Below, in pieces: positions 587 to 45,031 of a DNA stretch of 64,000 nucleotides. Numbering within the stretch: position 1 is the stretch's first letter; each line of letters opens with the position of its first letter. The notes below the pieces were generated by a model that ran no database searches, was not told where the DNA came from, and saw nothing but the letters and a program-made list of their open reading frames with translations. Location of the stretch: IMG/VR virus record IMGVR_UViG_3300037010_002844, positions 62,001-126,000 of that record, one strand, 5' to 3'. The position numbers and the translations under genes are program-made.

Positions 587-1132
587 TCAACCTTTCACCA
601 TCAGGGTGTCAAACGGTGGTGCGACGCCGGCATTGTTTTCTGCAGAAACCTTGAGCGCCTCGAGGATCCTCTTCTTCGGCCCCTCATTTCGCGTGGCACG
701 GAGGCTACCCAGTGCTGGCTCGGCGCCGCTGCCGATCGCGTCAAACTCCCGTGCACTCTCAATGAGCTGGAAGTTGCCCTCGACCATGTGCAGTTCGCCT
801 CTGTACCCGATCAACAAGGCACCGTGAAAATACCACTGCCCGTGGTGTTCAACGAGGCAGTCGAGCTTCTTCAGACCCTCGCGGAAGGCCGGGATCAGAT
901 CATTAACGAGGAACGTCTTAGTCGCCACGCCTTCCTCGTGCTTCGGGAACTCGATGGCGTGTTGGATGGCATCCATGACCTTGGACGAGCCGCTGACGCC
1001 GATGCCAATACCGCTCTTCGTGAAGATCTTGGGATGCTTGATGAGGGTGCGACCTAGATTGCCGCCCGTCGCGGCACGATCGCCGCCGAGCCACACGTTC
1101 TTACCGTCCACCAAACCAATGATACAGGTCAT
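587..1132 (-). CDS. HslV/ClpQ-like Ntn-hydrolase protease, paralog 2
   Basis: Start reassigned to the ATG at 1132 (MTCIIG) with AGGAG just upstream. Motifs GGDR, PKIF, GVSGS, AIGSG and AENNAGVAPPF. Confidence 0.8.
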   Translation of the reverse strand: MTCIIGLVDGKNVWLGGDRAATGGNLGRTLIKHPKIFTKSGIGIGVSGSSKVMDAIQHAIEFPKHEEGVATKTFLVNDLIPAFREGLKKLDCLVEHHGQWYFHGALLIGYRGELHMVEGNFQLIESAREFDAIGSGAEPALGSLRATRNEGPKKRILEALKVSAENNAGVAPPFDTLMVKG

Positions 1133-1134
1133 TG

Positions 1135-1314
1135 CTATTTCTCCTTGCCTTCTTGGGTTTCTTTCGACATACGTTCCGCATCGACCTGCCAAGCACCTTC
1201 CACAAGGGCCATGAACTGGTCGTGCGACAACTTGAGGAGGTGCGCTGCCTCAAGCGACGATTGAATCGCCGCCACGAAGAGGTCCTCAATGTTAGGTACG
1301 GGCTTGCGCTTCAT
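1135..1314 (-). CDS. Small hypothetical protein (59 aa, MKRKPVPNIEDLF...)
   Basis: Manually translated ATG-to-TAG ORF directly upstream of paralog 2; below the ORF-track length cutoff. Confidence 0.45.
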   Translation of the reverse strand: MKRKPVPNIEDLFVAAIQSSLEAAHLLKLSHDQFMALVEGAWQVDAERMSKETQEGKEK

Positions 1315-1339: not shown

Positions 1340-1560
1340 GTTCACGGTACTTTTGCAATTTATCAAGTGGTATCGCAACATCGTAGGTCCTCTTCACGTT
1401 AATGAGCAATGTGGACATACAATGTTATGTGCACATCGTGTACGATGATTCTTGAAGCGAAACGATGCTTGTATGCAATGCCGACGTAACCATCGTCACC
1501 CTGATGCATGCACAAGTCATCATAGATTCAATAAATGGCTGCCAAGCGATGATTATCGCT
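1340..1560 (-). pseudogene. Degenerate GIY-YIG homing endonuclease remnant
   Basis: Minus-strand translation AIY*IYDDLCMHQGDDGYVGIAYKHRF resembles the IYWI...GYVGI GIY-YIG signature, with TGA at the Trp position. AT-richer than its neighbours. Confidence 0.4.
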
Positions 1561-1594: not shown

Positions 1595-2254
1595 TCAATC
1601 AATGAGATTCCAATGTCGTTCATAGACATGAAGTGACCCAGCGTGCCAGATCATTGGACCCACGGGTAGACCCAAATCTGCCGCCAACTGCTGGTGAACA
1701 TAATCCTGCCAGGCTTTGTCGTTCTTGTATCCAAAGACGACGTCGTTCGACCTCATGCGAACGTCAGCAATGACTTGACCGTTGCGAATGAAATACTGAA
1801 CTGAGTCCGTGCAGATGAAATCACTCATCCCATCGCGGTTATATTCCTTCCAGATTGAGGGCCGCGTATAGATCATCTCGGCACGCCGGCTCTCCGGAGC
1901 ACGCTTCAGCTCTGCTAGCACGTGGTCATATTGCTTGTAGTTGTCCTCGCTCCAGATGAGGTAACCATAATTGGAGTTGATCTCGCCTCTCTTCGATGAA
2001 CAAGCCTTCCAGACCGCTGGTGCTCCACCGGGGATGTCATTGACGTTCCGTGACATGGAGCGATACCATTCAATCTCACGAGCCACGTAGTCCTGATTGA
2101 CCGTTCCGAAGATCGATGTTTCGTTAGCGATGAACGTAGCACCGACGACCTCGATCATCTTGCAACCAGACTTGTCAGTAACGTGTTCCTGGCGTTCCTT
2201 GAGGTCCTTAAACAAGGAGCGAACATCGGCAACCTTGTATTGAATTTGAATCAA
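1595..2254 (-). CDS. gp42: dCMP hydroxymethylase (T4 gp42-like, thymidylate synthase fold)
   Basis: Near-colinear with T4 gp42 as recalled: DKSG, REIEWY (Glu60), GEINSNYG, SRR, YTRPS, GMSDFICT (Cys148), MRSNDVVFGYKND (Asp179, cytosine specificity) and GSLHVYERH. Confidence 0.92.
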   Translation of the reverse strand: MIQIQYKVADVRSLFKDLKERQEHVTDKSGCKMIEVVGATFIANETSIFGTVNQDYVAREIEWYRSMSRNVNDIPGGAPAVWKACSSKRGEINSNYGYLIWSEDNYKQYDHVLAELKRAPESRRAEMIYTRPSIWKEYNRDGMSDFICTDSVQYFIRNGQVIADVRMRSNDVVFGYKNDKAWQDYVHQQLAADLGLPVGPMIWHAGSLHVYERHWNLID

Positions 2255-2443
2255 CTATTCCTCCACGCTTCTCGATGTTTTGATTACCAGCGATCCATTC
2301 TTTAGACTCACAAGCTCCAAGAGCACCGGTTCTTGTTGGGAAGGTAGAAACCCAGCAAACTTCGCAGTGTCGACATGTTCTCTTAGAGCAGTGCGTAGAT
2401 CATTACTGCTTGTAACAGCGTGTGTTGTTTCGATGATTTTCAT
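2255..2443 (-). CDS. Small hypothetical protein (MKIIETTH...)
   Basis: ATG at 2443 overlaps the epimerase stop (ATGA), and the ORF abuts gp42. Confidence 0.5.
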   Translation of the reverse strand: MKIIETTHAVTSSNDLRTALREHVDTAKFAGFLPSQQEPVLLELVSLKNGSLVIKTSRSVEE

Positions 2444-3399
2444 GTGTGCAGCTTCAATACCTTGGTCCACGACCAGTTGTCCTCGTACCACTTGATGGTG
2501 CGGTCCAAGCCGTCCCAGAATCGTACCACGGGGATGTACCCGAGTACACGCTCAGCTTTCGAAACGTCGGCCTGCGTGTGCATCACATCACCCGGGCGCC
2601 AAGGGGCATCGACATAGGAAGCGCCCGGATAACGACGCTTGAGCTCCTCAAGGATCTCTTTGTTCGTCGTTCGATCACCGCACGCCACGTTGAATGTTTC
2701 GGCTCCAAGCTTTCCAGAATACGTGGCTGCCTTCATGCAGGCTGACACCACGTTGTCCACGTAACACATGTCACGGGACTGTGAGCCGTCACCGTCGGAG
2801 CGCATAGGCACGCCTTTCTTGATCGCCGTCAACCACGCAGAAACCGCAGTAGCGTACGGTGAATCGCCGAGTTGATTGGGTCCGAAGACGTTGAAGAACC
2901 GCATGCAGGCTGAGTCGAGACCGTAAAGCTCGCTGTACAACCGCAGATAGTCCTCAATGATCGCCTTCTGCAGAGCATAAGGCGACTTGGGATTCCGTGG
3001 AAAAGTCTCAGGGGTCGGCAGCACATCAGCGCCTCCGTACACAGATGAGCTGGAGGCGAAGACGACGTGATTGACATTGCCCTTGCAAGCCTCCAGGAGG
3101 AGCAATGTCTTGTCGACGTTGACCTCATGCGTTCTCAAGGGATAGAGGACTGAGTAAGAGACCCGCGGGACCGCCGCCAGGTGAATGACCGTGTCAAACT
3201 CCTGACGCCTGATCCGATCGAGGACCGTGGAGTTCGCAAAGTCGTTGGGTTGAAAGCGCACTGCGATGGGCGATGGCAAGAATTCGCGGTGACCGTTGCT
3301 CAGGTCATCGACGCAGGTGACGTGCCACCCAGCATCTAGACACGCCTTCGTCAGGTTCGAACCTATAAAACCCGCGGCACCCGTAATCAAAACTCTCAT
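2440..3399 (-). CDS. NAD-dependent NDP-sugar epimerase/dehydratase (extended SDR, GalE/WbpP-like)
   Basis: GAAGFIGSNL Rossmann motif, HLAA, ASSSSVYG, YALQK (YxxxK), RFFNVFGP and RDMCYVDNVV. Confidence 0.9.
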   Translation of the reverse strand: MRVLITGAAGFIGSNLTKACLDAGWHVTCVDDLSNGHREFLPSPIAVRFQPNDFANSTVLDRIRRQEFDTVIHLAAVPRVSYSVLYPLRTHEVNVDKTLLLLEACKGNVNHVVFASSSSVYGGADVLPTPETFPRNPKSPYALQKAIIEDYLRLYSELYGLDSACMRFFNVFGPNQLGDSPYATAVSAWLTAIKKGVPMRSDGDGSQSRDMCYVDNVVSACMKAATYSGKLGAETFNVACGDRTTNKEILEELKRRYPGASYVDAPWRPGDVMHTQADVSKAERVLGYIPVVRFWDGLDRTIKWYEDNWSWTKVLKLHT

Positions 3400-3411
3400 G
3401 AGGTCATTATA
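3400..3411 (-). promoter_or_regulatory. Representative -10 box (TATAAT) 6 nt before ATG, leaderless-type promoter
   Basis: Same TAnnnT-N6-start geometry at starts 27585, 33098, 36526, 57209 and 58452. Confidence 0.55.
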
Positions 3412-3431
3412 TGCCTCACAGAGTCCTTAGT

Positions 3432-4226
3432 TCAACGGGTCGTGTTTAGCGACAAAAAGATGGTACCCCGGACAGGGTCAGCATCCAAGACACCACGAAT
3501 TGACGGGCTGGTGTAGTCGGCAAACAAACCCTCATCGGAAGTGTCTGCTAGGATCGCAGCAGGATCCTCGATCGAGGACTCAAATCCAAGCTTTATCATG
3601 ACCTCATCAAGATATATTGACACTTTCATGCACTGCTCGGGCGGAACCATCATACTGCACTTCGTCTTCAACGTCTTTGCATCCGGCATGGGCGAACAGG
3701 TGACCTTCGTCCCCTTGAGGCGTATGGCCTCACGCACAGCATTGACGACCTCAGTCAGCGTCTTCGGAGCCTTCTTGATGAGAGCAGTTGTCTTCGAACC
3801 CGACATCACGGAAACGACGGCCGTTGCCAGTGCCTTCGGATCGAACTTTGCGGGCCTGTGACCTGGGGCATAGTTCATGGCGTTGAAGTAACTGTCCGCC
3901 ATGTCAAGAACTGCATCGTGAACGTAGAACTCGACCATATCGAGCCACGTATCATGGCGTTCTGCAGGATCACGGATGCCAGACATCTCGGCCTCGATAT
4001 TGGTCCACGCCTCGTAAATCGCGCCGAAGATGGGCCCACCTTCGTAATCCTCATCGAGGGCCTCGTCGACGAGATCATCCGGCGCACCGGCCTGTTCGAG
4101 CGCCATGGCAAATGCCTTGCGAAACTCGGAAAATGACTTCGGAGGCGCTGCAGCGGCCTCCATGAGGTTGGCTACGACGGCGAGTACCTCTTCACGGATC
4201 ATTTGAACAAGCTCTGACTTCTTCAT
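3432..4226 (-). CDS. Hypothetical protein with an N-terminal LxxxIREE leader (probable virion-internal protein)
   Basis: 264-aa ORF starting MKKSELVQMIREEV, with an ATAATTA box upstream. Confidence 0.6.
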   Translation of the reverse strand: MKKSELVQMIREEVLAVVANLMEAAAAPPKSFSEFRKAFAMALEQAGAPDDLVDEALDEDYEGGPIFGAIYEAWTNIEAEMSGIRDPAERHDTWLDMVEFYVHDAVLDMADSYFNAMNYAPGHRPAKFDPKALATAVVSVMSGSKTTALIKKAPKTLTEVVNAVREAIRLKGTKVTCSPMPDAKTLKTKCSMMVPPEQCMKVSIYLDEVMIKLGFESSIEDPAAILADTSDEGLFADYTSPSIRGVLDADPVRGTIFLSLNTTR

Positions 4227-4269
4227 CGGCGGAGTCTCCCTGGCAGGTAATTATTACCTTAGGCGGAGG

Positions 4270-4557
4270 GGGCCTATAACTAGGCCTACACTTCTCGCAA
4301 GAGTGCCCTTGAAATTGCCAGACGACCACCGAAATTGATGTTTTTGAACTCAGCACTAACGAGTCCCCCACAGAATACGCAAGAATCCGTGGGTCTGACG
4401 GGCACTTTCTTTAGCTCTTCGATGCGCTTCTTTTCTTTCTCACGGGCAGCCTCAGCAACCTCTTTGAAGCGCTTTTCTCTTTATTTGCAGGTAGACTGTC
4501 GAGCCACCTCGCGAAAATGAATTGATCCATGTGATCGGGATCTTTATCGTTCTTCAC
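4270..4557 (-). pseudogene. Frameshifted small zinc-ribbon protein
   Basis: GTG overlaps the glycosyltransferase stop. The reading MKNDKDPDH...NKEK continues as KRFKEVAE...CVFCGG after a 1-nt slip in an A run, and a second slip gives GHSCEKC. Confidence 0.4.
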
Positions 4558-5891
4558 AGCAGGTCCATGCGCTTCATCGCCATCGGCGTCGTGGCCTCGT
4601 ACGAACATCGAGCTCGGACGACCGTCCGCAGACGATCGAGCCAGTCCTTCATGTACGCAGGTCGTTCCTTGATGTTATGAATCAAAGCTGAAGCAATGTG
4701 ATGCAGATCCTTGAAGTCCGGCGACGCCAAGAAGGGCCACTTACTGGCCTCCTGAGCGATGCTCGAATATTCGAAGTTATCGATCCACAGAGGCATACAC
4801 CCGAGCTCAATGCATTCTCGAGCGGCGGTGCCCCCATAGGTGTCCTGATCATAGAGGCTGACAGCGATGTCAGCCTGACGACAGATGACCTTGAACTCGT
4901 CGCGGTTAAAGGCATCCGGGACCAATGAAACGTAGCCATTAGGCCCGCACTCCTTCTCGAGCTCGTGGTTGAAGAACTTCTGGCTGGGGTTGCCCGCTAG
5001 CACAACGAAGTCCTGGCGCAGTTCACGGAGTTTCGGCAAGATGTCAAACATGAACTTGCCACAGTTGGTGTAGTCCGACGAACGACCGCGCCCGCCGACA
5101 CGGTTCGGGACGAAGAGGATGACCTTGCCTTCGGCGTGCCAGCGATTCAACAGGTCGGGATCAAACCTGACGTTGCTCATGTCGGGCTTAGAGTTGATCT
5201 CCTCGGCTGAGTAACCATCGTCCCAGGGATCCGACTTCATCAAGATGTCATTGACAATGTCCCGCTTCAGGACATTGTCAGCCTCGCGCTCGAACTCCTT
5301 CAAGGCCGAGGGACACTGCCAGAAGTTCCAGTCAGCCTTTATGGCTGCCTCAAGCTGGCCGAACCAGAGCGAGGCCTCTTCCGGAAACTTGGGACAAGAA
5401 GGTACGTCGACGAAGTGACTGTGCACGTAAAACCTGGGCCTATAACCACCAGTCACGTGGAACAACGCCTTGAAGTTGCGAAGGTGCATTGGGTCGTTGA
5501 TGTAGACCGCGTCCCACTTGGGCTTTTTGCCGATCTTCTGCATTCCGAGATCAAGGGCACTGGCGAGTGCCGACCAGTTGAAGTCGTACCGTGTCACCAA
5601 CGCGTTGGCGATGATCTCGTGCTCGATGAAATTCAGACGGCGCTCGCCATCCTCACCGTACTTGGCCCACAGGTCAGCATTGACATCCCGGGGATCTGTG
5701 ATAACCTGACGACCAGCGGGATCACCCGTCTTGGGGCACATCACGTCAATGTGAAGGTCAGGATTGAGCTTCAGCATTTCACGGACGCGGCCCATCACCA
5801 TCTGCCATCCTGAGTCACATTCGAGCAGAAACTTACCGTAGGTATTGTAATTGCTCAACTGTGTCTCGATCAAGAGCCTCTTGTGTTCCAT
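4554..5891 (-). CDS. GT-B fold glycosyltransferase, probable DNA (hmC) glycosyltransferase
   Basis: C-terminal LFVPNR...RDEFKVICRQADIAVSLY..DTYGGTAARECIELGCMPL resembles the GT4 donor-binding segment. Located in the gp42 cluster. Confidence 0.72.
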   Translation of the reverse strand: MEHKRLLIETQLSNYNTYGKFLLECDSGWQMVMGRVREMLKLNPDLHIDVMCPKTGDPAGRQVITDPRDVNADLWAKYGEDGERRLNFIEHEIIANALVTRYDFNWSALASALDLGMQKIGKKPKWDAVYINDPMHLRNFKALFHVTGGYRPRFYVHSHFVDVPSCPKFPEEASLWFGQLEAAIKADWNFWQCPSALKEFEREADNVLKRDIVNDILMKSDPWDDGYSAEEINSKPDMSNVRFDPDLLNRWHAEGKVILFVPNRVGGRGRSSDYTNCGKFMFDILPKLRELRQDFVVLAGNPSQKFFNHELEKECGPNGYVSLVPDAFNRDEFKVICRQADIAVSLYDQDTYGGTAARECIELGCMPLWIDNFEYSSIAQEASKWPFLASPDFKDLHHIASALIHNIKERPAYMKDWLDRLRTVVRARCSYEATTPMAMKRMDLL

Positions 5892-6169
5892 GAAGCAGTA
5901 TCTACTACTTGTTTATCAAGTTGTATTGGGTTGAAGGAAAAGGCAAGCGATCAGGCCAAGCGACAAACGTCGATCAATCGCTATGGCGTCAAATGCTATG
6001 CAAGCACCTGAAGCTCTAGAAAAAAGACATGTCTCGAACACAGACTATAGGCAACACATTGGGTGCAATAATCTTGCCTCCACACTTTTTGCTTCCATGA
6101 GAAGACACTCCATACCATAGTGGTTCTTGTAGTCAGAAGTGTCTTTCCCATAGTAGCAACAGGGGTGCA

Positions 6170-6853
6170 TCAGGTCGCCTTCTTGTAGACACGAGTGTTC
6201 TTGCGGTAGAAGCTCGCAAAGGCACACTTCAGGCGATTGCCCTTACCTGGCACCTTGAGGTTGGCAAATGCAGCTGACAACGCGGGATCGACCACGTACC
6301 CGCGGGTCGCCATCTTCTTGATGACCTCGTCGACCGGTTGGCAGTTGACATGGTGACGCCCCCACTGTGGGTGCCAATCTGGCCCTCCCGGCAGGCGCTC
6401 GCCCAACCGATTGACCTTCAACGTCAAGTTGGCATCATAGGTACCCCAGCCCGAGGCCACGCCGAAGACTACGAGCCTCGGATCCGGCGACAACAGGCAG
6501 TCCAAAAAGTTCGACTCTTTGTCATGAGTCACGTGTTCCATCGCCTCGAGCGACATGCAGACATCGCGTGAGCCCACCGTCAGGTTCTGAGGCGACACAG
6601 TCCCAATGTCGATCTTTTGGAAGTTCTTGACATCGATCCTCAGCTGATTGACGTCAGCGAAGCCATCGCAGCCCCAGACCGGGATGCTGCCCTCGAGCGG
6701 CTCCAACCAATCACCTTGACCGCAGCCGAAGTCGGCAATCGACTCAGCCTTCAGAACATTCAAAACGAAATCCTTCCACGCCGGTAGCCCGTGAGCGAAA
6801 TACTGCCGACCATCGTCAAAGAAGCCACTGTCGTAATTGATGGGTTTTGCCAT
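6170..6853 (-). CDS. Class I SAM-dependent methyltransferase (glycan-associated type)
   Basis: IADFGCGQG motif I, WGCDG and SLEAMEH post-II. Start reassigned to MAKPINYD (6853), next to the kinase stop. Confidence 0.8.
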   Translation of the reverse strand: MAKPINYDSGFFDDGRQYFAHGLPAWKDFVLNVLKAESIADFGCGQGDWLEPLEGSIPVWGCDGFADVNQLRIDVKNFQKIDIGTVSPQNLTVGSRDVCMSLEAMEHVTHDKESNFLDCLLSPDPRLVVFGVASGWGTYDANLTLKVNRLGERLPGGPDWHPQWGRHHVNCQPVDEVIKKMATRGYVVDPALSAAFANLKVPGKGNRLKCAFASFYRKNTRVYKKAT

Positions 6854-6854
6854 G

Positions 6855-7394
6855 TCAGTCCTTGTTAAGGAAGTCGATGATTTCCTCGGTCTCGCGGGCG
6901 AGGTTCTCGTCGTCAACGTTCAACCTCAAGATCCTGCACTTCGACCAACTTGCAAATTCCTCATAGGCGCTGTGAAGGCTGGTCAGCAGCTCTTCTCCAA
7001 TGCTAGGGTCGAGGTCGTCCTTGATACCCGCGTAATTGGAGCGTTGCGCAAAGATCACGCGAGCGCCCAATGATGCCCATGCCTCGTCCATGTGTCGCAG
7101 CATCATCAAGTCGGTCTCACGGCCAAATACCTTTGCATATGCATACTCACACGGAAAGCCTCGGTCGAAGATGACACTGTAGCCCGTTTGCTTCAACAGG
7201 TCATATACACGGGGATCTGCGAAACGCAGTTGATTCAAGAATTTGTCGTTCTTGGTGACCCGCGAGCTTAGAAATGAGGTGTATTCTGAGGTCGCCTTGA
7301 AATACGGAATGCCAGTTACCCGCGAAAGCTCGCGGGCCATCTCGGTCTTACCACAACGATCTGGTCCGACAAAAAACGTTAGTGATTGTTTCAT
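6855..7394 (-). CDS. dNMP kinase (thymidylate-kinase-like), probable hm-dCMP kinase
   Basis: P-loop VGPDRCGKT, IFDR motif, context in the gp42 cluster, and GGAAGG upstream. Confidence 0.8.
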   Translation of the reverse strand: MKQSLTFFVGPDRCGKTEMARELSRVTGIPYFKATSEYTSFLSSRVTKNDKFLNQLRFADPRVYDLLKQTGYSVIFDRGFPCEYAYAKVFGRETDLMMLRHMDEAWASLGARVIFAQRSNYAGIKDDLDPSIGEELLTSLHSAYEEFASWSKCRILRLNVDDENLARETEEIIDFLNKD

Positions 7395-7509
7395 TTACTT
7401 CCTTCCAGATTACGTCTGGATCTTGACGGGCAAGATCAAATACAATCTTGGGAAATCAACATCTGTTACTACACGAAACTCTATCCCGCGTTACGCCATG
7501 CCGATTATC

Positions 7510-8079
7510 TTAAACCGTGGGAATCGGCGTGTTCAGCTCGGGCGCATCTTGCACGTTTTCATAGTTCACGTAGAGCCCGTGACTGCCCACGCCCTTGCGC
7601 ACGTGTCCCAGGGACTCGCAGAAGACCACGTACTGCGCCAGCTGTTCCTCAACCTTCGACACCTCACCCACCTGGTCCTTGCCACGGTGCTTAAAGGTCA
7701 CACGTTGGCCCACAGAATATTTGGGAGTAACCCCATGGTGGTTTACCCATTCCGCGATCAGAGAATTGTGAGCCTTGATTCGCATGTAAGCTACATCCTC
7801 CAAGAGGTGGAGGAGCTCGTGATCAACCTCCCAGTAGTGAATGTTGTCCAACATCTTGGCAATGTCGTACGCATCGTCGTCGAACCTGACGGCACTTCTC
7901 AGGTCATCATGGATCTCCTTCAGGTAGGATTTCTCAAACTTGTCGGTGTCATCGCCCGCGGACTTCATCCACTGAATGACGCGTGGCATCAGGGCATCGA
8001 GCAGGCGCTCGAGCACCTCGGGATCCGTGCGATTCGGGCGAGGCGGCCAACCGCAGCCGAAGAGGACCTGCTGCTTCAT
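7510..8079 (-). CDS. Hypothetical protein
   Basis: 189-aa ORF with start/stop overlap to its upstream neighbour. Confidence 0.6.
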   Translation of the reverse strand: MKQQVLFGCGWPPRPNRTDPEVLERLLDALMPRVIQWMKSAGDDTDKFEKSYLKEIHDDLRSAVRFDDDAYDIAKMLDNIHYWEVDHELLHLLEDVAYMRIKAHNSLIAEWVNHHGVTPKYSVGQRVTFKHRGKDQVGEVSKVEEQLAQYVVFCESLGHVRKGVGSHGLYVNYENVQDAPELNTPIPTV

Positions 8080-8344: not shown

Positions 8345-11300
8345 ATGAAGGTCACCCTGGGCACATTGCGCGAGTCAATCCTAGAAAGCTACGTTGAGAT
8401 TCTCGTCGAAGGCCGCATAGAAGACGCCCGTGAACGGTACCCTGACATTTCCGACGAGGACTTCGATGACCTAGTCGAGAATCAGCCGCAAGGGTCCAAC
8501 AACAAGTACCTGATGTGGTGTGCCAAGCAGGTCGACGATGGCTTTTCAGTCAACGTCGTCGTCCAGAACATGCGATTGTTCGACGGCAACAAGCAGCGAC
8601 TCGAGAAGAAGGACATCAACCAGTATGAAGATCCCAGCGCCATCGAGACCGCTGTCCAGGCCTTGGGTGGCAAGTCGAAGAGCCAGGAGTCCAAGCAGGC
8701 CAAGGCTGATTCTGACGTGATCTACAATGATGATCACTGGTTGGTCATCCGTCCTCACACCATGGGAGCCTCCTGCAAGTACGGCATCGGAACCAAGTGG
8801 TGCATTGCAGCGACCACGAGCCACAACTACTTCTCGACGTATTCAACCAGCAACAACAAGTTCTACTTCGTCATTGACAAGACGCAGTTGCAGACCACAC
8901 CCCCGCCTCCGAGTTCCAAGTACGCCATCGTCATTCGTGACGAGGCGGGCCGCAATAATGAGGCCTACGATGCCTCTGACAAACGAGTCCCGGTATCGAC
9001 AGTTGCTAAACACGTGGGCGTCGAGTGGCCGGCAATCTGGTCAAAGATTGAGGCTCACGTCAAGAAGGTCCCACTGACCCGTGAGGTTGAGGACGAACAA
9101 CGCGCGGTTGAGGAGCATGTCAATGACCTGATGGCGGGCAAAGACGTGTCTTCGCAGGCGCTACAAAAAATCGCCAAGAGTGCCAAGATGACGTTGCGGG
9201 TGGTGCAGAAGGTCTATGATCTCGCGGCGAAGAAGGTCGAGACCGGAGAAGACAAGTACATGCTTTCATTCTTGATGTATGCGCTCAGCGACAACATCGG
9301 CAACTTGACGCCCGATGCGGCGATGTTCTTCATTCAGAAGATCGGCGATGGCGGCAACAGCTACTACATCAAGCGGGCCATCGAACATGCCAACCTGACA
9401 GAAGAGAACTTCACGCAGTTGGTGAAGAGCGGCAACGAGGCCGTCATCGCGGCCATCATGGAGAATCCACGCGCTCCTGACGCATTGAAGGACGAGATCG
9501 TTAAGGTCATTCCGAACTTCAAGAATGACATGGCAAAACACGATGCATGGTGGGCCTTGATCAAAAGCGGGCGCTACACGCTTGAGCAGTTCAAGGAAGC
9601 CGTGGAAAGCAGCTCTGCTTCACATTACCACGTCGTCGCAGGTCAGGTGTTGAGACACATTGACGAACTGAACTTGACGCCCGAGCAGCTCATGTTGATC
9701 CCCGTCACTGACGAATACGACCTGAAGAACATCATGAAGGCACCCAACCTGCCACCGGCTCACCTAGGTGCCTTGATCGTTAAGCTCCGTGACAAGTTGT
9801 CGACGCAGTTCTTGATCAAGTTGTTGAAGCAGTCGAACATCGACTCTGACACTGTCGAGTTGTTGTGGAAGTCGGTCACGCCCGACATCAGGACGGCGCT
9901 ATTGCAGAACCCGTCGATCGGAGCGTCAAATGCCAGCAAGTTCGCCCTCAGCAAGAATCACGCCTACCGCTTTGCGGTGGCCCACAATCCGGTCACGCCC
10001 AAGGAGGACCTAGCTGTCCTCGCAGGTGATGAGTCGACTTCTACGCGGGCCGCGGTGGCTGCTAACCCCAACACGCCCGTTAATGTTCTGAAACAGCTAT
10101 CCCGCGATGAGGCCGTCGCCATCCGCGCGGCTGCCGCGTCAAATGCCGCTGTCGGCAACGATGTCCTGCAGGCCTTGACCAAAGACAGCGACAACTTCGT
10201 CAGGAGGGTCGCTCGCAAGACTCTGAAGTCCCTAAAGGTCGCTGAGGCCTATGTCAAGGCTGCGATGGGCATGCGTAGGATCTTGTTGGAAGAGCTCAGC
10301 GACGAAAACGAGAACCAGGACATCATGAATCCCTCCTGGCGCGACATCTCGACAAAGTCTCTCAAGTCTGACGAGTTCATTGTCATCTTCTTGCTGCAGA
10401 ACAACGGCCACGCCACCCGCGAAGAAATCGAGTCAGCATGGTTTGACTGGATGGGTCGCCTGGTTCGACGCCACGATTTGTGGAAGAGCACTCAACACGG
10501 CAAGGAACCCGTGCGAGGCATCAATGCCAGCGGCTCAGCTTGGTACTGGGCACCGCCGGGTATCGACAAGGGCGCGCTGTTCCAGCTGACGCCCGCGGGC
10601 GCGGCTGCTGCCATGCATGCCCTGAACAAGGTTCGTGGCAGCGTTGAGCCAAGGCGCTCTGAGGTCGGCTCGGCCGGCGCACGCCCGGGCAGGACGTACT
10701 ACATCAGCAATGATGTCTCGGCTTTTGACATCACCGGCCGCGAAAATGACGAGATCGAAAGTGAAGAGATCGAGGTCAATCGTTACTCTTCCGAGCCCGT
10801 CATCCGCGGTGGCAAGTACACGAAGTTGTCACCGAATCGCAGCCGTGCGTCCAGGATGCGCACCAAGGGCGCGGTCTACTGGAAGTTCACGAGCCCGAAT
10901 GGCCGTGAGACGTACACCAAGAACCTACCTCAGGTTGCCTTGAAGCGCGGTGCCGAGGTCACATACGTCAAGGCTGTCCATGCTCCGGGTAGCGGTGGTC
11001 ACCCGTACAACATGGCGATGGTCAAGTATGGCGACAGGTACCTGTTGACCGCATTCCCGTTGATGACGACGGCCTCGGGCGCCCGTGAGGAAAATGCACC
11101 AGAAAACGTGGCGCCGCCGATTAAGAAGTCGCCGCCGTCGAAGGCAACAGCTGCCGCGCCCGCCGCAGCTGCAGCGATTGAGCCCACGGCAGCCAAGGGT
11201 CCGAAGACGACCTACAAAATCTACGGCCGATTCAAAGGTCACCCGGCCGCGACGCGATTGAAAGGTCAAGCCTACGTGGCCGGACAAGACACGCAGTTCT

Positions 11301-13198: not shown

Positions 13199-13419
13199 GT
13201 GAGCAGGTCCTTCAACAGGTCTTCGATCGCTCCTGCGTTCGGTTCATCAAGCATTGCTTTAGCATACTCTTCTTCAATGTACTCGTCAGTCGGCTGGAGT
13301 TCAACCTTCGTTTCGCTTTTGCGTCGGTAACGTGCCGCGGCCCGTAACAGTTCGATCGGACTCAGACCCATGCGTTGGGCAATGTCATTCAGTGCGATTT
13401 CAAACGGCGGTCTTTTCAT
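13195..13419 (-). CDS. Small hypothetical passenger gene between the halves of intein 6
   Basis: 74-aa ORF; ATGA overlap with the start of dnaE fragment 8. Confidence 0.55.
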   Translation of the reverse strand: MKRPPFEIALNDIAQRMGLSPIELLRAAARYRRKSETKVELQPTDEYIEEEYAKAMLDEPNAGAIEDLLKDLLT

Positions 13420-15344: not shown

Positions 15345-15345
15345 A

Positions 15346-15591: not shown

Positions 15592-15595
15592 GTCT

Positions 15596-15810: not shown

Positions 15811-15814
15811 GGTT

Positions 15815-16800: not shown

Positions 16801-16856
16801 CTCTGTAAGGCGACATGGCCACGGTCGCGGCGAAACCTGCGACCAAAACGCCCGCC

Positions 16857-26211: not shown

Positions 26212-27234
26212 CTAGGCGATGACCTTCCGGAAGTAATCGATGGAACGTTTGAGGCCTTCTGCGAGCTGCACCTTGGGCTCCCACCCTAGACGATTCTGGG
26301 CTTGGGTGATGTCGGGCCGACGCTGCGTCGGGTCATCGACAGGCAGCGGTTTGTAGTCAAACCAACGGGCCACATCGCGGTGAGGTGCCTCGCGCCCACC
26401 GTAGATTTGGTGAATGACCTCCTTCGCCAACTGATTCATCGTGAACTCGTGCGGGTTGCCGAGGTTGATGGGCATCCGCGGGTTGTTGCCCAGATCGCCC
26501 AAGGTCACAATGCCTTTGATCAGGTCGTCCACGTAACAAAAGCTACGTGTCTGTTGACCGTCACCGTAGATCGTCAACTTCTCGCCCTTCAAGGCCTGGA
26601 CGATGAAATTGCTGACGACCCGGCCATCGTATGGGTCCATGTGCGGACCGTAGGTGTTGAAGATCCGGACCATGCGAGCGTCGACACCGTGGGTATGTAG
26701 GTAGTCATAGCACAGGGCCTCTGCCGCACGTTTTCCCTCGTCGTAACAGGCTCTGGGCCCGTAGGAGTTGACGCGACCTCGGTATGACTCGACCTGCGGC
26801 GAACTCTCGGGATCACCATAGACCTCAGAAGTCGAAGCGTGGACCACGATCGATCCATGCGATGCCGCCAGTTCCAGGACGTTCTGGACGCCTAGCGTAC
26901 AGGTCATCATGGTCTCCACGGGCATGCGCTGGTAGATGGGCGGCGATGCTGGGCAGGCGAAGTTGTAGATGATGTCGAAGCGTACCGAGTGCATCGACCC
27001 GGTGTCGTAATCGTGAATCACGCGACTAAAGCGACTGTCTCCATGGACGTCAGCGATATCGCAGTACATCAACGTCGCCAGCGGAAACTTCTTGATCTCA
27101 TCGACCTGAATCGACTCCGGCTTCGACGAACAGAAATTGTCGAGGCCGAGGACCTTGTCACCCGCCCTCAAGTGATGTAGCATCAAGTGCGAACCCAGAA
27201 AACCAGCGGCTCCCGTGACGAGGACAGTCTTCAT
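26212..27234 (-). CDS. uxs: UDP-glucuronate decarboxylase (UDP-xylose synthase, UXS-like SDR)
   Basis: GAAGFLGSHL, NFACPASP, ASTSEVYGDP, VNSYGPRACYDEGKRAAE, RIFNTYGP, DGRVVSNFIVQAL, QTRSFCYVDDL and DDPTQRRPDI. Confidence 0.9.
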   Translation of the reverse strand: MKTVLVTGAAGFLGSHLMLHHLRAGDKVLGLDNFCSSKPESIQVDEIKKFPLATLMYCDIADVHGDSRFSRVIHDYDTGSMHSVRFDIIYNFACPASPPIYQRMPVETMMTCTLGVQNVLELAASHGSIVVHASTSEVYGDPESSPQVESYRGRVNSYGPRACYDEGKRAAEALCYDYLHTHGVDARMVRIFNTYGPHMDPYDGRVVSNFIVQALKGEKLTIYGDGQQTRSFCYVDDLIKGIVTLGDLGNNPRMPINLGNPHEFTMNQLAKEVIHQIYGGREAPHRDVARWFDYKPLPVDDPTQRRPDITQAQNRLGWEPKVQLAEGLKRSIDYFRKVIA

Positions 27235-42543: not shown

Positions 42544-42912
42544 TCAATAGCCATTTTCGATGCGCTCCACGTTGGTGCGACCCTTTTCGAGGTAAGCCTC
42601 GAACAGTTCATCCAATGTGATACCTGAGGCGATGACGAGCTCGAGGTAGAGATGCAGAGCATCGACTAGCTCTTCTTTGTATTCCTCGCGGTCCACGTGA
42701 GGAAGTTCAGTCGCCCGGTGTGACTTTGCATTCTTGAGATGCTGCCCGGCCTCAAACAGTTCCTCCATGATGTGATTGCGAATGTCCTTCAGGAACTTCT
42801 GCCCTTGCTTCGACGTAATGTCAGTCGGGAAGTCCGGGAAACCGCGCTTCTTCTGCAGGAGCCTCATGAACGACTCCTGTTGGTCCCAAAGCATCTGCAA
42901 ACGATCGGTCAT
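42544..42912 (-). CDS. All-alpha NTP pyrophosphatase (dimeric dUTPase/dCTPase, MazG-like)
   Basis: IMEELFEA...YKEELVDALHL ExxE/EExxD metal motifs, and AYLEK..N..R..NGY terminus. Confidence 0.8.
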   Translation of the reverse strand: MTDRLQMLWDQQESFMRLLQKKRGFPDFPTDITSKQGQKFLKDIRNHIMEELFEAGQHLKNAKSHRATELPHVDREEYKEELVDALHLYLELVIASGITLDELFEAYLEKGRTNVERIENGY

Positions 42913-43307
42913 CCGTACACCCTCACGCATTCGCGCATCGTGTTATCGTGTTATCGTGTTATCGTGGATCTCGAGCACCTTTGGGATGCTACCATCCTTC
43001 TCAGTCTGATAGCCGCCTGCGAGGTCCAGGCCACTGGAGTGCGACTTTTGGCTAGGTCATCGAAGACCATTGCGTCTCGGAGTCGCAACTGTTCCGTTGT
43101 CATCCACCCGCCATACGGGTCATTGATGTGTGGATCAGCGCCGGCCTGGAACAGGACGATGTCAGTGTAACTCATCCAGTCGAGGACGTCACTGAGCTCT
43201 CGGAAGAGATCATTGACCTGACTGTGATGCATGTAGCGTTGGCCGGCCGTGAAGTGTTGAATCCAAGAACCGGCGTTGAGGCGCTTGATGATCTCGGGAT
43301 CACTCAT
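42909..43307 (-). pseudogene. Histone deacetylase-family (HDAC/AcuC-like) C-terminal remnant
   Basis: DIVLFQAGADPHINDPYGG..TEQLRLRD, then W(N)LAGGYQ after a 1-nt deletion; N-terminal part absent. Confidence 0.75.
42937..42966. repeat. Tandem 8-mer repeat (TTATCGTG x3.75) inside the HDAC remnant
   Basis: atcgtg ttatcgtg ttatcgtg ttatcgtg. Removing two units restores IHDNTMRECVRVYG*. Confidence 0.85.
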
Positions 43308-44266: not shown

Positions 44267-45031
44267 TCAGACGTACAGTGCGCGGAGATTGCCGTCAGGC
44301 ATCACCAGCTCGAACGCCTCGAGGCTGGCCTGAAATTGTCCGGTCATCTGGGCGAGCTTCAGCATCGCTTCCGCGATGTGCCGCACTTCGACCTGAGCGT
44401 GCTTCGAGTAGCGCAGCCTCAGGAAGTGGACGAAGCTTCGAAAGTTGAACATCACGTCAGCCGTGATCTGATTGCCGTAAGGTAGATAGAACCTCGCGGT
44501 CTCCTTGGCGCGCTTGCGTGGCACTCCCTTGGTCACGAGTCGCTCCAACGTTTCATGGTAGCGTTCCATCGCCTGTTCCATGTGATCGATGTAACGAGCA
44601 CGTTCTTCATCGTCCCAATCGAATGGCACGTAGTACTTGTCGTCCTTCAGCTCCTTATATCGAGCCGATTCTGCATTGACAGAAACGCCGATGCGGTGCT
44701 TGATCAGGTGGATGTGCGTGGCAATGTCAGTCGTCACCAGGAAGTGCAGAGACGACTTCTCGAAAGGCGTCTCGTGACCAGCAGAAGCGAGGTCCTTCAA
44801 CAACTTCGGAAGTCGGGCACGCTTCTCGTCGGTCAGATCCCGCGAGGTACTGGTCCAGGCTGACATGGCATGGCTCTGATCGCCACCGTAGATGCCGACC
44901 AGCTCGACGGTGTTGGGACCAGCGCCTTTGCCCTTGATCTTGATGGGCTCCGGAGGAGGCGAAGAAATAGTCGGCACCTCAACTTGGGGCTGAGAACCTT
45001 TGCTGGTTTTTGCGGATTTCTTCTGCTTCAT
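44267..45031 (-). CDS. thyX: FAD-dependent thymidylate synthase
   Basis: GHETPFE, HLIKHR, SVNAESARY, AKETARFYLP, NFRSFVHF..LR and AQVEVR. Confidence 0.92.
   Translation of the reverse strand: MKQKKSAKTSKGSQPQVEVPTISSPPPEPIKIKGKGAGPNTVELVGIYGGDQSHAMSAWTSTSRDLTDEKRARLPKLLKDLASAGHETPFEKSSLHFLVTTDIATHIHLIKHRIGVSVNAESARYKELKDDKYYVPFDWDDEERARYIDHMEQAMERYHETLERLVTKGVPRKRAKETARFYLPYGNQITADVMFNFRSFVHFLRLRYSKHAQVEVRHIAEAMLKLAQMTGQFQASLEAFELVMPDGNLRALYV

What the first reader, a model, noticed from the sequence alone, without database searches (positions are those of the whole stretch)
1595..7394. hmC hypermodification cluster with a non-T4 sugar module
Seen: a gp42-like hydroxymethylase (Cys148, Glu60 and Asp179 equivalents intact), an NDP-sugar epimerase, a GT-B glycosyltransferase, a SAM methyltransferase and a dNMP kinase, all on one strand within 6 kb. 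Established: T4 makes hmC with gp42, gp1 and gp56 and glucosylates it using host UDP-glucose, with no sugar-synthesis genes of its own. Inference: this phage builds its own donor sugar and attaches it to hmC in DNA, giving a probably undescribed base modification that blocks restriction and CRISPR.
Basis: partly seen in the sequence, partly recalled or inferred. Interest (0 to 1): 0.82.

Follow-up and report, generated by a model that had tools for sequence, protein, structure and literature searches.

The report
Jumbo-phage hydroxymethylcytosine glycosylation gene cassette
An uncultured 309-kb phage carries a conserved gene set that very probably replaces cytosine in its DNA with hydroxymethylcytosine and then attaches a sugar it prepares itself; this kind of anti-restriction DNA disguise is known, but the transferase family and sugar enzymes here are untested.

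Summary
On the minus strand of 1595-7394 lie a T4 gp42-like dCMP hydroxymethylase, an SDR UDP-sugar 4-epimerase, a 445-aa GT-B glycosyltransferase, a class I SAM methyltransferase, a small nucleotide kinase and one unexplained 264-aa ORF.

The hydroxymethylase call is strong: about 55% identity to T4 gp42, with every diagnostic residue of a hydroxymethylase rather than a 5-hydroxycytosine synthase.

The transferase belongs to a phage-only family of more than 400 unnamed clusters with no Pfam match. It is not T4 AGT/BGT-like.

In more than 40 related metagenomic phage contigs, kinase, GT-B, epimerase and a cytosine-type TS homolog stay together. The TS homolog has been swapped among four clades, and the GT has been replaced by an unrelated GT-B family.

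The kinase is homologous to RB69 gp45. The kinase + GT-B + TS-homolog triad matches the characterised cytosine-glycosylation clusters of RB69, DLP3 and RL38J1.

The window also holds a UDP-xylose synthase, a MazG-like NTPase and ThyX.

Glycosylated hmC is therefore the best reading. The acceptor and the sugar remain inferred. Epimerase-dependent hmC glycosylation was already shown in 2024, so this is a new variant of a known kind.

The parts
1595..2254 (-). dCMP hydroxymethylase (T4 gp42-like thymidylate-synthase homolog), TTG start
   Evidence: PDB 1b49 matches at E 8e-76. It is 52-56% identical to Tevenvirinae gp42. The catalytic Cys is present. Asp stands at the ThyA N177 position, Asp at the L143 position, and Asp169 is retained. 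RB69 gp48, a 5hoC synthase, has Asn at position 169 (criteria from PMC13326640). The start is orthologous to the Met of L004, L010 and L016.
2440..3399 (-). SDR UDP-sugar 4-epimerase, closest to UDP-HexNAc(A) 4-epimerases
   Evidence: Pfam Epimerase 6e-51. Best PDB relatives are 10ke, 6dnt, WbgU, WbpP and 6wjb, at 1e-44 to 9e-54. The GxxGxxG, Ser and YxxxK motifs are visible, and no dehydratase TDE motif is present. Thr stands at the 'gatekeeper' position (HTQAD). It scores below all NCBIfam equivalog cut-offs. It is adjacent or near-adjacent to the GT and TS homolog in most related loci.
3432..4226 (-). 264-aa acidic ORF of unknown function in a variable slot of the cassette
   Evidence: No Pfam, PHROG, NCBIfam or PDB hit. 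The Atlas model is poor. It is found at about 41% identity in L002 and L010, and ORFs clustered with it also appear in L007. Probably not a core part.
4554..5891 (-). GT-B glycosyltransferase of an unnamed, phage-only family ('GT445'); proposed DNA hmC glycosyltransferase
   Evidence: AF2 model pLDDT 90.9. Foldseek against the PDB gives MshA, BshA, GlgM, glycogen synthase and OtsA at E 1e-12 to 1e-9, TM 0.6-0.7. Atlas features score 0.98-0.99 to GT1/GT4 clusters. There are 415 homolog clusters at 57-67% identity, none named. It is absent from GenBank phages and from 185,579 species genomes.
6170..6853 (-). class I SAM-dependent methyltransferase, accessory, substrate unknown
   Evidence: Motif I is DFGCGQGDW. 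Some homologs carry a precomputed PF13489. AF2 model pLDDT 88.6. Foldseek hits are generic small-molecule, NDP-aminosugar and RNA methyltransferases, TM about 0.5. It is present next to the kinase in only part of the lineage.
6855..7394 (-). P-loop nucleotide kinase (dNK/Tmk-like), homolog of RB69 gp45; proposed hm-dCMP kinase
   Evidence: phrog_761 1e-9. Atlas TM 0.8-0.9 to viral Tmk/dNK-like clusters. The family profile matches deoxyguanosine kinase 2jas at 6e-5 and YorR at 5e-3. hhalign against RB69 gp45 gives probability 94.8%, E 5e-8. It is present in essentially all related loci.
26212..27234 (-). UDP-glucuronate decarboxylase (UDP-xylose synthase); possible second donor-sugar enzyme
   Evidence: PDB UXS1 structures 4gll and 2b69 match at E 4.5e-83 over residues 69-338. 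Homologs at 54-62% identity lie on at least 17 of the 33 GT445 contigs. Where the polymerase gene has no inteins they sit just upstream of it.
42544..42930 (-). MazG/dimeric-dUTPase-type NTP pyrophosphohydrolase; candidate dCTPase (gp56 analog)
   Evidence: Pfam dUTPase_2 1e-5 and PRA-PH. phrog_12184 'nucleotide pyrophosphohydrolase' 2e-16. No PDB sequence match. Homologs lie directly upstream of the PolIII-kinase-GT cassette in L017, L026 and L033.
44267..45031 (-). ThyX flavin-dependent thymidylate synthase (context: dTMP supply does not need the ThyA homolog)
   Evidence: Pfam Thy1 6.9e-37. A thymidylate kinase is next to it at 43677-44258.

Best explanation
The cluster is a cytosine hypermodification cassette of an uncultured jumbo phage.

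Shown by sequence:
- The gp42-like enzyme has every feature of a dCMP to 5-hydroxymethyl-dCMP synthase.
- The phage makes dTMP separately with ThyX.

Inferred steps:
1. The adjacent RB69-gp45-type kinase helps carry hm-dCMP towards hm-dCTP.
2. A MazG-like NTPase in the window and a dCMP deaminase just outside it deplete dCTP.
3. The phage PolIII-type replicase, encoded right next to the cassette, then builds hmC into DNA.
4. After replication, the 445-aa GT-B enzyme transfers a sugar from a UDP-sugar onto the 5-hydroxymethyl group of hmC in DNA.
5. The neighbouring SDR 4-epimerase makes that donor by inverting C4 of a host UDP-sugar. By similarity this is most likely UDP-GlcNAc to UDP-GalNAc. 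UDP-Gal, UDP-GalA or, together with the phage UDP-xylose synthase, UDP-L-arabinose remain open.
6. The SAM methyltransferase is an optional tailoring or unrelated accessory gene.
7. The product would protect the DNA from host nucleases, as glucosyl-hmC does in T4.
For: Hydroxymethylase:
-, using the residue criteria of PMC13326640.

GT-B fold of the 445-aa protein:
-.
- The same top structural neighbours (MshA, BshA) are reported for validated phage DNA glycosyltransferases.

Cassette conservation:
- Kinase, GT, epimerase and TS homolog lie close together in 30 or more IMG/VR contigs.
- L005, L009, L017 and L026/L033 carry bare four-gene versions. L017, L026 and L033 have a rearranged but still contiguous order.

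Swapping with kept function:
- TS homologs at this slot fall into four clades: two gp42-like, one intermediate, one MilA-like (PDB 5jnh 1e-42).
- Every one of the 37 examined keeps Cys, Asp(N177), Asp(L143) and Asp169.
- On the GT tree the TS type changes at least 8 times. The sister pair L002/L003 (support 100/98) carries different types.
- Relatives lacking GT445 (L156, L160, L164, L165) carry a sequence-unrelated GT-B-like gene of about 350 aa (Pfam Glyco_trans_1_2; L164 scores 30.6 bits against a cut-off of 25) next to the same kinase and TS homolog.

Link to characterised systems:
- The kinase family is homologous to RB69 gp45.
- RB69 gp45-46:47-48, DLP3 gp78-79-80 and RL38J1 gp214-215-216 are each nucleotide kinase + GT-B + TS homolog (RB69 and eight other Straboviridae loci checked).
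- T4 gene 42 itself is followed directly by beta-gt.

Donor synthesis:
- Epimerase and UXS.
- Partner epimerases were shown to be required for several phage 5hmC glycosyltransferases.

Supporting nucleotide genes:
- ThyX, Tmk, MazG-like NTPase and dUTPase.
- dCMP deaminase and thymidine kinase just beyond the window.
Against: - No direct evidence that DNA is the acceptor. The family has no characterised member.
- There is no detectable sequence homology to T4 AGT/BGT: no PDB sequence hit and neither in the top 50 fold hits. There is none to the Straboviridae GT1 family either.
- Part of the co-occurrence reflects shared ancestry of one phage lineage. The region is a general replication and nucleotide-metabolism block (PolIII, HslV-like genes, exonuclease, helicase and homing endonucleases are interspersed).
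- The kinase is often separated from the GT by several unrelated ORFs.
- The role of the RB69 gp45-type kinase is itself not demonstrated. In RB69 the gp1-type kinase was the one tested.
- L027 and L029 lack the epimerase, and L165 lacks both GT445 and the epimerase. The epimerase is therefore not obligatory.
- The identity of the sugar rests on similarity only. All NCBIfam equivalog cut-offs are missed.
Confidence: 0.6

Rival explanations
1. The phage does make hmC DNA, but the GT-B enzyme and the epimerase (and UXS) glycosylate something other than DNA, such as a virion protein, a host envelope glycan or another small acceptor. They sit beside the hydroxymethylase only because the whole early region is inherited as a block.
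For: - The structural neighbours of GT445 are enzymes acting on small molecules, lipids and glycans.
- Jumbo phages are known to carry GT clusters assigned to surface polysaccharide modification, and phage GTs can glycosylate virions.
- UXS homologs occur in many viral contigs that are not among the 33 GT445 contigs.
- Unrelated genes are interspersed in the region.
Against: - The GT slot next to the kinase and TS homolog is refilled by an unrelated GT-B family when GT445 is absent.
- The TS homolog is replaced repeatedly, but always by a cytosine hydroxymethylase type.
- Compact four-gene cassettes exist, and they keep together on rearrangement.
- The same triad is found in three experimentally characterised DNA-glycosylating phages, with a homologous kinase.
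- No membrane or secretion features were noticed, and no polysaccharide genes (flippase, polymerase) are nearby.
Confidence: 0.22
2. The TS homolog is a 5-hydroxycytosine (5hoC) synthase like RB69 gp48, and the sugar is ether-linked directly to C5-OH rather than to a hydroxymethyl group.
For: - gp42-like annotations proved wrong for RB69, DLP3 and RL38J1.
- The cluster architecture and the kinase are shared with those phages.
Against: - The diagnostic D169N substitution of all tested 5hoC synthases is absent. The window protein and all 37 relatives read RSxD, whereas RB69 gp48 reads RSQN in the same alignment.
- The window protein is about 55% identical to T4 gp42 itself across the whole active site.
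Confidence: 0.05
3. The cassette makes a soluble modified nucleotide or nucleoside (a mildiomycin-like hydroxymethyl-cytosine glycoside, or a signalling or toxic molecule) rather than modifying the genome.
For: - Many relatives carry MilA-like TS homologs.
- In mildiomycin synthesis, from my own knowledge, MilA is followed by a glycosyltransferase that uses UDP-glucuronate, and UDP-glucuronate is the substrate of the phage UXS.
Against: - No MilB-type nucleotide hydrolase was seen in the cluster.
- RB69 and DLP3 TS homologs are also 'MilA-like' by structure yet act in DNA modification.
- The window enzyme is a close gp42 relative.
- The cassette sits with the replicase and the dNTP-pool genes.
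Confidence: 0.03

Closest known systems
T4 hmC pathway (gp42, gp1, gp56, alpha-gt/beta-gt)
   Same: - The hydroxymethylase is a true gp42 homolog (about 55% identity, all catalytic residues).
- As in T4, a GT-B transferase gene lies close to it. T4 beta-gt directly follows gene 42.
- A MazG-type NTPase and a dCMP deaminase are present as gp56/cd analogs.
   Different: - The GT is not related in sequence to AGT or BGT, and neither is among its top 50 structural matches.
- The kinase is dNK/Tmk-like, not gp1-like.
- The phage encodes donor-sugar enzymes (a 4-epimerase and UXS), which T4 lacks.
- dTMP comes from ThyX, and the replicase is PolIII-alpha type.
5-hydroxycytosine glycosylation clusters of RB69, DLP3 and Rhizobium phage RL38J1 (Lee et al., NAR 2026, PMC13326640)
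   Same: - The same triad is present: Tmk-like nucleotide kinase + GT-B (MshA/BshA-like by fold) + cytosine-specific TS homolog, together with phage-encoded UDP-sugar synthesis genes.
- The kinase families are homologous (hhalign 94.8%).
   Different: - The TS homolog here keeps Asp169 (hydroxymethylase signature) instead of Asn (hydroxylase).
- The GT shows no sequence homology to the Straboviridae GT1 family.
- The sugar genes are an SDR 4-epimerase and UXS, not the arabinose-5-P isomerase/kinase/uridylyltransferase set or UDP-galactopyranose mutase.
- The gene order relative to transcription is kinase, GT, TS here, and TS, GT, kinase in RB69.
Phage C5-MT/TET-dependent 5hmC glycosylation clusters, subclass II (epimerase + GT) (Pyle et al., bioRxiv 10.1101/2023.12.21.572611; Cell Rep 2024)
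   Same: - A GT is paired with a sugar epimerase that supplies the donor.
- Those clusters gave Hex-, HexNAc- and HexA-5hmC experimentally.
- The GT-B members likewise resemble BshA and MshA.
- Their survey noted GT-B genes next to TS homologs and epimerases.
   Different: - There hmC is made after replication, by a C5-methyltransferase plus a TET-like dioxygenase. Here it is made before replication by a gp42-type enzyme.
- No C5-MTase or Tet_JBP domain was found among the window ORFs scanned.
- Subclass II GTs are mostly GT-A.
- Whether GT445 was in their survey is unknown.
GT4-type retaining glycosyltransferases MshA / BshA
   Same: Best structural matches: TM up to 0.63 normalised by query length and 0.73 by target length, E about 1e-12 to 1e-10. 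The fold is two-Rossmann GT-B, with a conserved Glu359, a Gly-rich YGGT segment and Lys305 in the C-terminal domain.
   Different: - Sequence identity is 11-14%.
- There is no Pfam Glycos_transf_1 match.
- Only the second Glu of the EX7E motif is conserved.
- The protein has about 60-80 extra residues.
- MshA and BshA act on small-molecule acceptors.

Membership tests
dCMP hydroxymethylase (T4 gp42 type, TS superfamily) | Thymidylate-synthase fold and significant similarity to gp42 | tested here: met
   PF00303 1.9e-16. PDB 1b49 8e-76 over residues 16-219.
dCMP hydroxymethylase (T4 gp42 type, TS superfamily) | Catalytic Cys (T4 C148), Asp at ThyA N177 (T4 D179, cytosine specificity), Glu60 | tested here: met
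   DFICT, KND and REIEWY align with T4 DFMCT, RND and RELEWY.
dCMP hydroxymethylase (T4 gp42 type, TS superfamily) | Acidic residue at ThyA L143 (hydroxymethyl rather than methyl product) and Asp169 retained (not a 5hoC synthase) | tested here: met
   Asp stands three residues before the Cys. RSND is present, against RSQN in RB69 gp48. Criteria are from PMC13326640.
dCMP hydroxymethylase (T4 gp42 type, TS superfamily) | Enzymatic conversion of dCMP to 5hm-dCMP | not testable with these tools
   Needs expression and LC-MS.
Kinase + GT-B + TS-homolog cytosine glycosylation cluster (RB69/DLP3/RL38J1 type) | Tmk/dNK-like nucleotide kinase homologous to RB69 gp45 in the cluster | tested here: met
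   hhalign of A3 against RB69 gp45 gives 94.8%, E 5e-8. YorR and dGK hits match those reported for DLP3 gp78.
Kinase + GT-B + TS-homolog cytosine glycosylation cluster (RB69/DLP3/RL38J1 type) | GT-B glycosyltransferase between or next to the kinase and the TS homolog | tested here: met
   Fold. Position.
Kinase + GT-B + TS-homolog cytosine glycosylation cluster (RB69/DLP3/RL38J1 type) | GT homologous in sequence to the Straboviridae arabinosyltransferase-1 family | tested here: not met
   hhalign of A1 against RB69 gp46 and gp47, and against a nine-phage alignment: probability below 1%.
Kinase + GT-B + TS-homolog cytosine glycosylation cluster (RB69/DLP3/RL38J1 type) | TS homolog with D169N (5-hydroxycytosine synthase) | tested here: not met
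   Asp is retained. This is the hydroxymethyl variant of the architecture.
Kinase + GT-B + TS-homolog cytosine glycosylation cluster (RB69/DLP3/RL38J1 type) | Glycosylated cytosine in virion DNA | not testable with these tools
   The phage is uncultured.
T4 alpha-/beta-glucosyltransferase (GT72 / GT63) | Sequence or closest-fold similarity to AGT or BGT | tested here: not met
   No PDB sequence hit at E<=1. Neither is in the top 50 Foldseek matches. Only the general GT-B fold is shared.
CAZy GT4-like retaining GT-B enzymes | Glycos_transf_1-type C-terminal domain detectable by profile, and the EX7E motif | tested here: inconclusive
   No Pfam hit at E<=0.01. The fold and Atlas features agree. 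Only the second Glu (E359) is invariant.
Extended-SDR UDP-hexose 4-epimerase | GxxGxxG NAD site and Ser...YxxxK triad, with no dehydratase Asp-Glu pair | tested here: met
   TGAAGFIGS, SSSSVYG and YALQK are seen in the alignment to 10ke and 6dnt. Pfam 6e-51.
Extended-SDR UDP-hexose 4-epimerase | Assignment to one substrate class (NCBIfam equivalog cut-off) | tested here: not met
   The best matches are TviC (153.9 bits against a cut-off of 760) and GalE (153.4 against 262.3). The substrate is inferred only from nearest structures (WbgU, WbpP) and the small gatekeeper residue.
C5-MT/TET-dependent 5hmC glycosylation clusters (Pyle et al.) | C5-cytosine methyltransferase plus 5mYOX/TET dioxygenase next to the GT | tested here: not met
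   No such domains were found in the cluster or in the other window ORFs scanned. Only two N6/N4-type DNA methylases were found, 27 kb away.
UDP-glucuronate decarboxylase (UXS) | High similarity to UXS1 with the TSEVYG and YDEGKR motifs | tested here: met
   PDB 4gll 4.5e-83. The motifs are visible in the alignment.

The most novel reading that the evidence does not exclude
A whole lineage of uncultured jumbo phages with PolIII-type replicases carries a modular cassette next to the replicase gene. Parts of the cassette are swapped freely: four hydroxymethylase clades and at least two unrelated GT-B families. In this phage it may produce an hmC glycan not yet seen in any DNA. One candidate is a pentose (xylose or L-arabinose) made from UDP-glucuronate by the phage's own UXS plus 4-epimerase. 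Another is GalNAc further methylated by the accessory SAM methyltransferase. The unnamed family of more than 400 clusters would then be a new class of DNA glycosyltransferase.
Probability: 0.25. Interest if true: 0.65.

Novelty: new variant of a known kind. Interest (0 to 1): 0.5.

Why it matters
If the prediction holds, it adds a large, wholly uncharacterised, phage-only glycosyltransferase family to the known DNA-modifying enzymes. The family has more than 400 sequence clusters and no Pfam model.

It would also show that the kinase + GT-B + TS-homolog architecture, just described for 5-hydroxycytosine phages, is used for hydroxymethylcytosine as well, and in jumbo phages far from T4.

The repeated replacement of both the hydroxymethylase and the transferase within one conserved slot is a clear example of arms-race-driven module shuffling. 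It also gives a practical rule for mining new DNA hypermodifications: anchor on the gp45-type kinase.

New sugar-hmC adducts and their transferases are useful for epigenetic sequencing chemistry. They also help in judging which restriction, CRISPR or type IV systems a phage can evade.

The concept itself is not new.

Tried and rejected
- Megablast of the cluster against GenBank phages found nothing.
- tblastn of GT445 and of the kinase against GenBank phages found nothing.
- Sequence searches of the PDB with the GT, the 264-aa ORF, the MTase, the kinase and the MazG-like protein gave only chance-level hits.
- hhalign of the GT445 family against RB69 gp46 and gp47, the Straboviridae GT1 alignment and the alternative GT-B family all failed.
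- Read-through of the stop at 2255-2257 was rejected. Such read-through would have given a longer hydroxymethylase. The TTG start is orthologous to Met in close relatives, gene callers do not call the 78-aa ORF, and it has no family hits.
- The inserted ORFs of related loci were checked as possible extra sugar genes. They are an exonuclease, a helicase, an amidase and GIY-YIG or other homing endonucleases, or have no family match.
- Isoelectric point was tried as a sign of DNA binding and is uninformative. The GT1 family of the characterised Straboviridae clusters is acidic too.
- Promoter and terminator scans were at chance level.
- Rfam and tRNA scans of the window were empty.
- The GT445 family was not found in 185,579 bacterial and archaeal species genomes, so there is no host clue.
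- ORFs 28880-30031 and 31938-33098 near the UXS were checked as possible second GTs. They have no family hits and no GT-like sequence features.

Full report
**What is in the window**

The region 1595-8079 carries a row of minus-strand ORFs. The window matches IMG/VR contig IMGVR_UViG_3300037010_002844 (309,433 bp), and the same genes occur on several JGI and Logan assemblies. There is no nucleotide-level relative among 50,697 GenBank phage records.

The rest of the window is a replication and nucleotide-metabolism region:
- a ribonucleotide reductase large subunit
- a DnaB-type helicase
- UvsX
- an SSB
- a 5'-3' exonuclease
- a PolA-like protein
- ThyX, thymidylate kinase, dUTPase and a MazG-like NTPase
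- an RNA-repair set
- two N6/N4 DNA methylases
- a PolIII-alpha gene broken up by inteins and homing endonucleases

**The hydroxymethylase**

ORF 1595-2254 (219 aa) matches T4 deoxycytidylate hydroxymethylase structures at E 8e-76. It is 52-56% identical to gp42 of many Tevenvirinae.

A 2026 paper showed that several 'gp42-like' proteins (RB69 gp48, DLP3 gp80, RL38J1 gp216) are in fact flavin-dependent 5-hydroxy-dCMP synthases. It gave these residue criteria (PMC13326640):
- Asp at ThyA N177 means a cytosine substrate.
- An acidic residue at L143 means the product is not a methyl group.
- Asn at D169 means a hydroxylase.

I fetched RB69 gp48 and T4 gp42 and aligned them with the window protein.
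- The window protein has the Cys, Asp(N177), Asp(L143) and Asp169 (RSND), exactly as T4 does.
- RB69 gp48 reads RSQN.

It is therefore a hydroxymethylase by the best current criteria.

The TTG start directly follows an in-frame stop (2255-2257). It aligns with the initiator Met of the closest orthologs, so the 78-aa upstream ORF is not part of the gene.

The phage has ThyX for dTMP. This fits a non-thymidylate role for this ThyA homolog. In jumbo phages, ThyA and ThyX are otherwise anticorrelated.

**The other genes of the cluster**

*Epimerase (2440-3399).*
- It is an extended SDR (Pfam 6e-51).
- It carries the NAD motif and the Ser/YxxxK triad of epimerases rather than dehydratases.
- Its nearest structures are UDP-GlcNAc(A) 4-epimerases (10ke, 6dnt, WbgU, WbpP, 6wjb).
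- It has a small residue (Thr) where E. coli GalE has the bulky gatekeeper Tyr299. The gatekeeper rule is from my own knowledge.
- It misses every NCBIfam equivalog cut-off, so the substrate is not settled.

*The 445-aa protein.*
- It has no Pfam, NCBIfam, PHROG or PDB sequence match.
- It has 415 homolog clusters at 57-67% identity. All are unnamed, and they sit on contigs of up to 351 kb.
- With an alignment of 30 of these, AlphaFold gives pLDDT 90.9.
- The model is a GT-B fold whose best PDB matches are MshA, BshA, GlgM, glycogen synthases and OtsA. T4 AGT and BGT are not in the top 50.
- Among viral models the best matches are Arthrobacter phage glycosyltransferases. Lower down come T4-like phage proteins, a cyanophage 'DNA alpha-GT' and SP-15 GTs.
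- The family is absent from GenBank phages and from one genome each of 185,579 prokaryotic species.

*Methyltransferase.*
- The gene is really 6170-6853 (227 aa).
- It has a class I SAM-MTase fold with only generic structural neighbours.

*Kinase (6855-7394).*
- It is a dNK/Tmk-like P-loop kinase.

*The 264-aa ORF (3432-4226).*
- It remains unexplained and is poorly conserved.

**Is it one functional unit?**

I fetched 33 IMG/VR loci through the GT and 43 through the kinase.

*Conservation of the set.*
- In nearly all GT-anchored loci the order is kinase ... GT - epimerase - TS homolog, followed by two HslV-like genes.
- Some contigs have the bare four-gene set (L005, L009, L017, L026/L033). 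In L031/L032 only two short ORFs intervene.
- In L017, L026 and L033 the last two genes are inverted in order but remain contiguous.
- Inserted ORFs in other loci are unrelated: an exonuclease, a helicase, an amidase and a homing endonuclease.

*The TS homologs.*
- TS homologs at this slot belong to four clades. One is MilA-like (PDB 5jnh 1e-42).
- All 37 sequences examined keep the hydroxymethylase signature.
- On a maximum-likelihood tree of the GT, the TS clade label needs 8 changes against a minimum of 3.
- The strongly supported sister pair L002/L003 carries a gp42-like and a MilA-like enzyme respectively.
- The hydroxymethylase has therefore been replaced repeatedly, always by the same functional type.

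*Relatives without GT445.*
- L156, L160, L164 and L165 have the kinase and the TS homolog but no GT445.
- They carry instead a protein of about 350 aa with a Pfam Glyco_trans_1_2 match. In L164 the match is above the cut-off.
- That gene sits right beside the kinase.
- Its family shows no hhalign similarity to GT445 or to the Straboviridae GT1 family.

A slot that is refilled by unrelated enzymes of the same fold class is hard to explain by inherited gene order alone.

**Link to characterised systems**

Table 1 of PMC13326640 lists the following:

| Phage | Nucleotide kinase | GT-B transferase | TS homolog |
|---|---|---|---|
| RB69 | gp45 | gp46:47 | gp48 |
| DLP3 | gp78 | gp79 | gp80 |
| RL38J1 | gp214 | gp215 | gp216 |

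- I confirmed the TS homolog-GT pair in RB69 and eight other Straboviridae; the Tmk-like kinase gene is annotated beside it in five of those eight and in RB69, and a similar-sized unnamed ORF follows in two more.
- A profile of the window's kinase family aligns with RB69 gp45 at 94.8% probability, E 5e-8.
- The same profile hits YorR, the structure reported as the top match of DLP3 gp78.
- The GT families are not detectably homologous. A short NAxxTRxxF(x)W motif is shared, which I treat only as a lead.
- Pyle et al. showed that phage GTs paired with an epimerase put hexose, HexNAc or hexuronate on 5hmC. They also showed that the epimerase is usually required, and that GT-B types resemble BshA and MshA and often neighbour TS homologs.

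**Donor sugar**

Beyond the epimerase, ORF 26212-27234 is a UDP-glucuronate decarboxylase, that is a UDP-xylose synthase (E 4.5e-83 to human UXS1).
- Its homologs lie on at least 17 of the 33 GT445 contigs.
- Where the polymerase gene has no inteins, they sit just upstream of it, giving the order UXS - PolIII - kinase - GT - epimerase - TS.
- UXS homologs are also common in other viral contigs, so the link to the cassette is looser.

The donor could be a 4-epimer of a host UDP-hexose or UDP-HexNAc. This is the best guess by similarity. It could also be a pentose made through UXS with or without the epimerase.

**Supporting pool-control genes**

- A MazG/dUTPase_2-type NTP pyrophosphohydrolase lies at 42544-42930. 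Its homologs sit directly upstream of the PolIII-cassette block in three compact loci.
- A dCMP deaminase and a thymidine kinase lie just beyond the window start.

These are the functional analogs of T4 gp56 and cd. Their specificities are not shown.

**Verdict**

The mechanism rests on strong homology for the hydroxymethylase. For the other steps it rests on fold, context, and the parallel with characterised clusters. The proposed sequence is:
1. pre-replicative synthesis of hm-dCMP;
2. phosphorylation;
3. incorporation into DNA;
4. post-replicative glycosylation of hmC by the GT-B enzyme, using a phage-tailored UDP-sugar.

I put 0.6 on the full statement. I put about 0.9 on the hydroxymethylase step alone.

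The kind of system is known (T4; Pyle et al. 2024; Lee et al. 2026). What is new here:
- the GT family;
- the hmC version of the kinase-GT-TS architecture;
- the SDR/UXS donor genes;
- the jumbo-phage setting;
- the evidence for repeated part-swapping.

Noticed in passing
window 12068-25762 (minus strand): The replicative DNA polymerase III alpha gene is spread over about 13.7 kb in many pieces: 24077-25762, 23495-23992, 18994-19851, 15815-16414, 14329-15030 and 12068-13198. Between the pieces lie Hint/intein splicing domains, HNH endonucleases and a ROS/MucR-like ORF. Intein-free homologs in L002, L005 and L009 span about 3.6 kb. Several pieces are in separate ORFs, so both inteins and other insertions (introns or a truly split gene) are possible.
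   Followed up: partly
window 17352-19151 (-) and 19837-21570 (+): Two paralogous ORFs of 577-599 aa lie inside the polymerase region. They match PHROG 'homing endonuclease/HNH' families at 1e-59, and more weakly a 'Mom-like DNA modification protein' family (1e-10 and 2e-6). One lies on the opposite strand.
   Followed up: no
window 26212-27234 (-): A phage-encoded UDP-glucuronate decarboxylase (UDP-xylose synthase), strongly similar to human UXS1 (E 4.5e-83). Homologs were found at 281 places in IMG/VR viral contigs; only the best 80 were kept and compared with the hmC cassette contigs.
   Followed up: partly
window 38-583 and 587-1192 (-): Two tandem HslV/proteasome-beta-like peptidase genes directly downstream of the hydroxymethylase. 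The pair is conserved at this position in most related contigs. No HslU partner was seen in the window.
   Followed up: no
window 46405-50046 (-): The ribonucleotide reductase large subunit is 1213 aa. Matches to the RNR profiles lie in residues 26-229 and 672-1212, with a gap of about 440 residues between them. This suggests an intein or other insertion.
   Followed up: no
window 33125-33907 and 34636-35427 (-): Two N6/N4-type DNA methyltransferase genes (PF01555, 1e-43 and 7e-27). The phage DNA is probably also methylated on adenine or on N4 of cytosine.
   Followed up: no
window 37101-37988, 39671-40675, 40762-41718 (-): An RNA repair set: an RNA ligase, a polynucleotide kinase-phosphatase (PNKP) and an RlaP-type nucleotidyltransferase. 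A CCA-adding enzyme lies just outside the window (L034).
   Followed up: no
window 1359-1373 and 5912-5926 (minus strand): The 15-nt motif ATAC[C/A]ACTTGATAAA occurs only twice in the window, against 0.12 expected. Both copies are in intergenic DNA: one 21-35 nt upstream of the GT start and one upstream of the HslV-like genes. It may be a phage promoter or operator element.
   Followed up: partly
GT445 residues 96-106 (window about 5576-5606) and Straboviridae GT1 alignment A4: The otherwise unrelated GT445 family and the GT1 family of RB69-like phages share a conserved NAxxTRxxF(x)W motif in the N-terminal (acceptor) domain. hhalign aligned the two motifs, but the match is not significant (P 0.09).
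   Followed up: partly
L156, L160, L164, L165 (kinase-anchored loci): A second, unnamed GT-B-like family of about 350 aa (weak to moderate Pfam Glyco_trans_1_2 matches) replaces GT445 next to the kinase and hydroxymethylase in some related phages. L156 and L164 also carry an extra SDR gene beside it.
   Followed up: partly
window 8345-11404 (+): A 1019-aa protein with leucine-rich-repeat-variant (LRV) repeats, encoded on the opposite strand. It interrupts the minus-strand gene row between the polymerase and the cassette. It is present at 41-60% identity, and variably placed, in some relatives.
   Followed up: no
window 3432-4226 (-): An acidic (pI 4.7) 264-aa protein with no relatives of known function sits in a variable slot between the GT and the epimerase. 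Other lineage members have unrelated small ORFs or a GIY-YIG endonuclease there.
   Followed up: partly
window 30962-31933 (-) and 28321-28875 (-): An LD-carboxypeptidase (peptidase S66) gene and a Dps-like ferritin-fold gene. Both are unusual auxiliary genes for a phage replication region.
   Followed up: no
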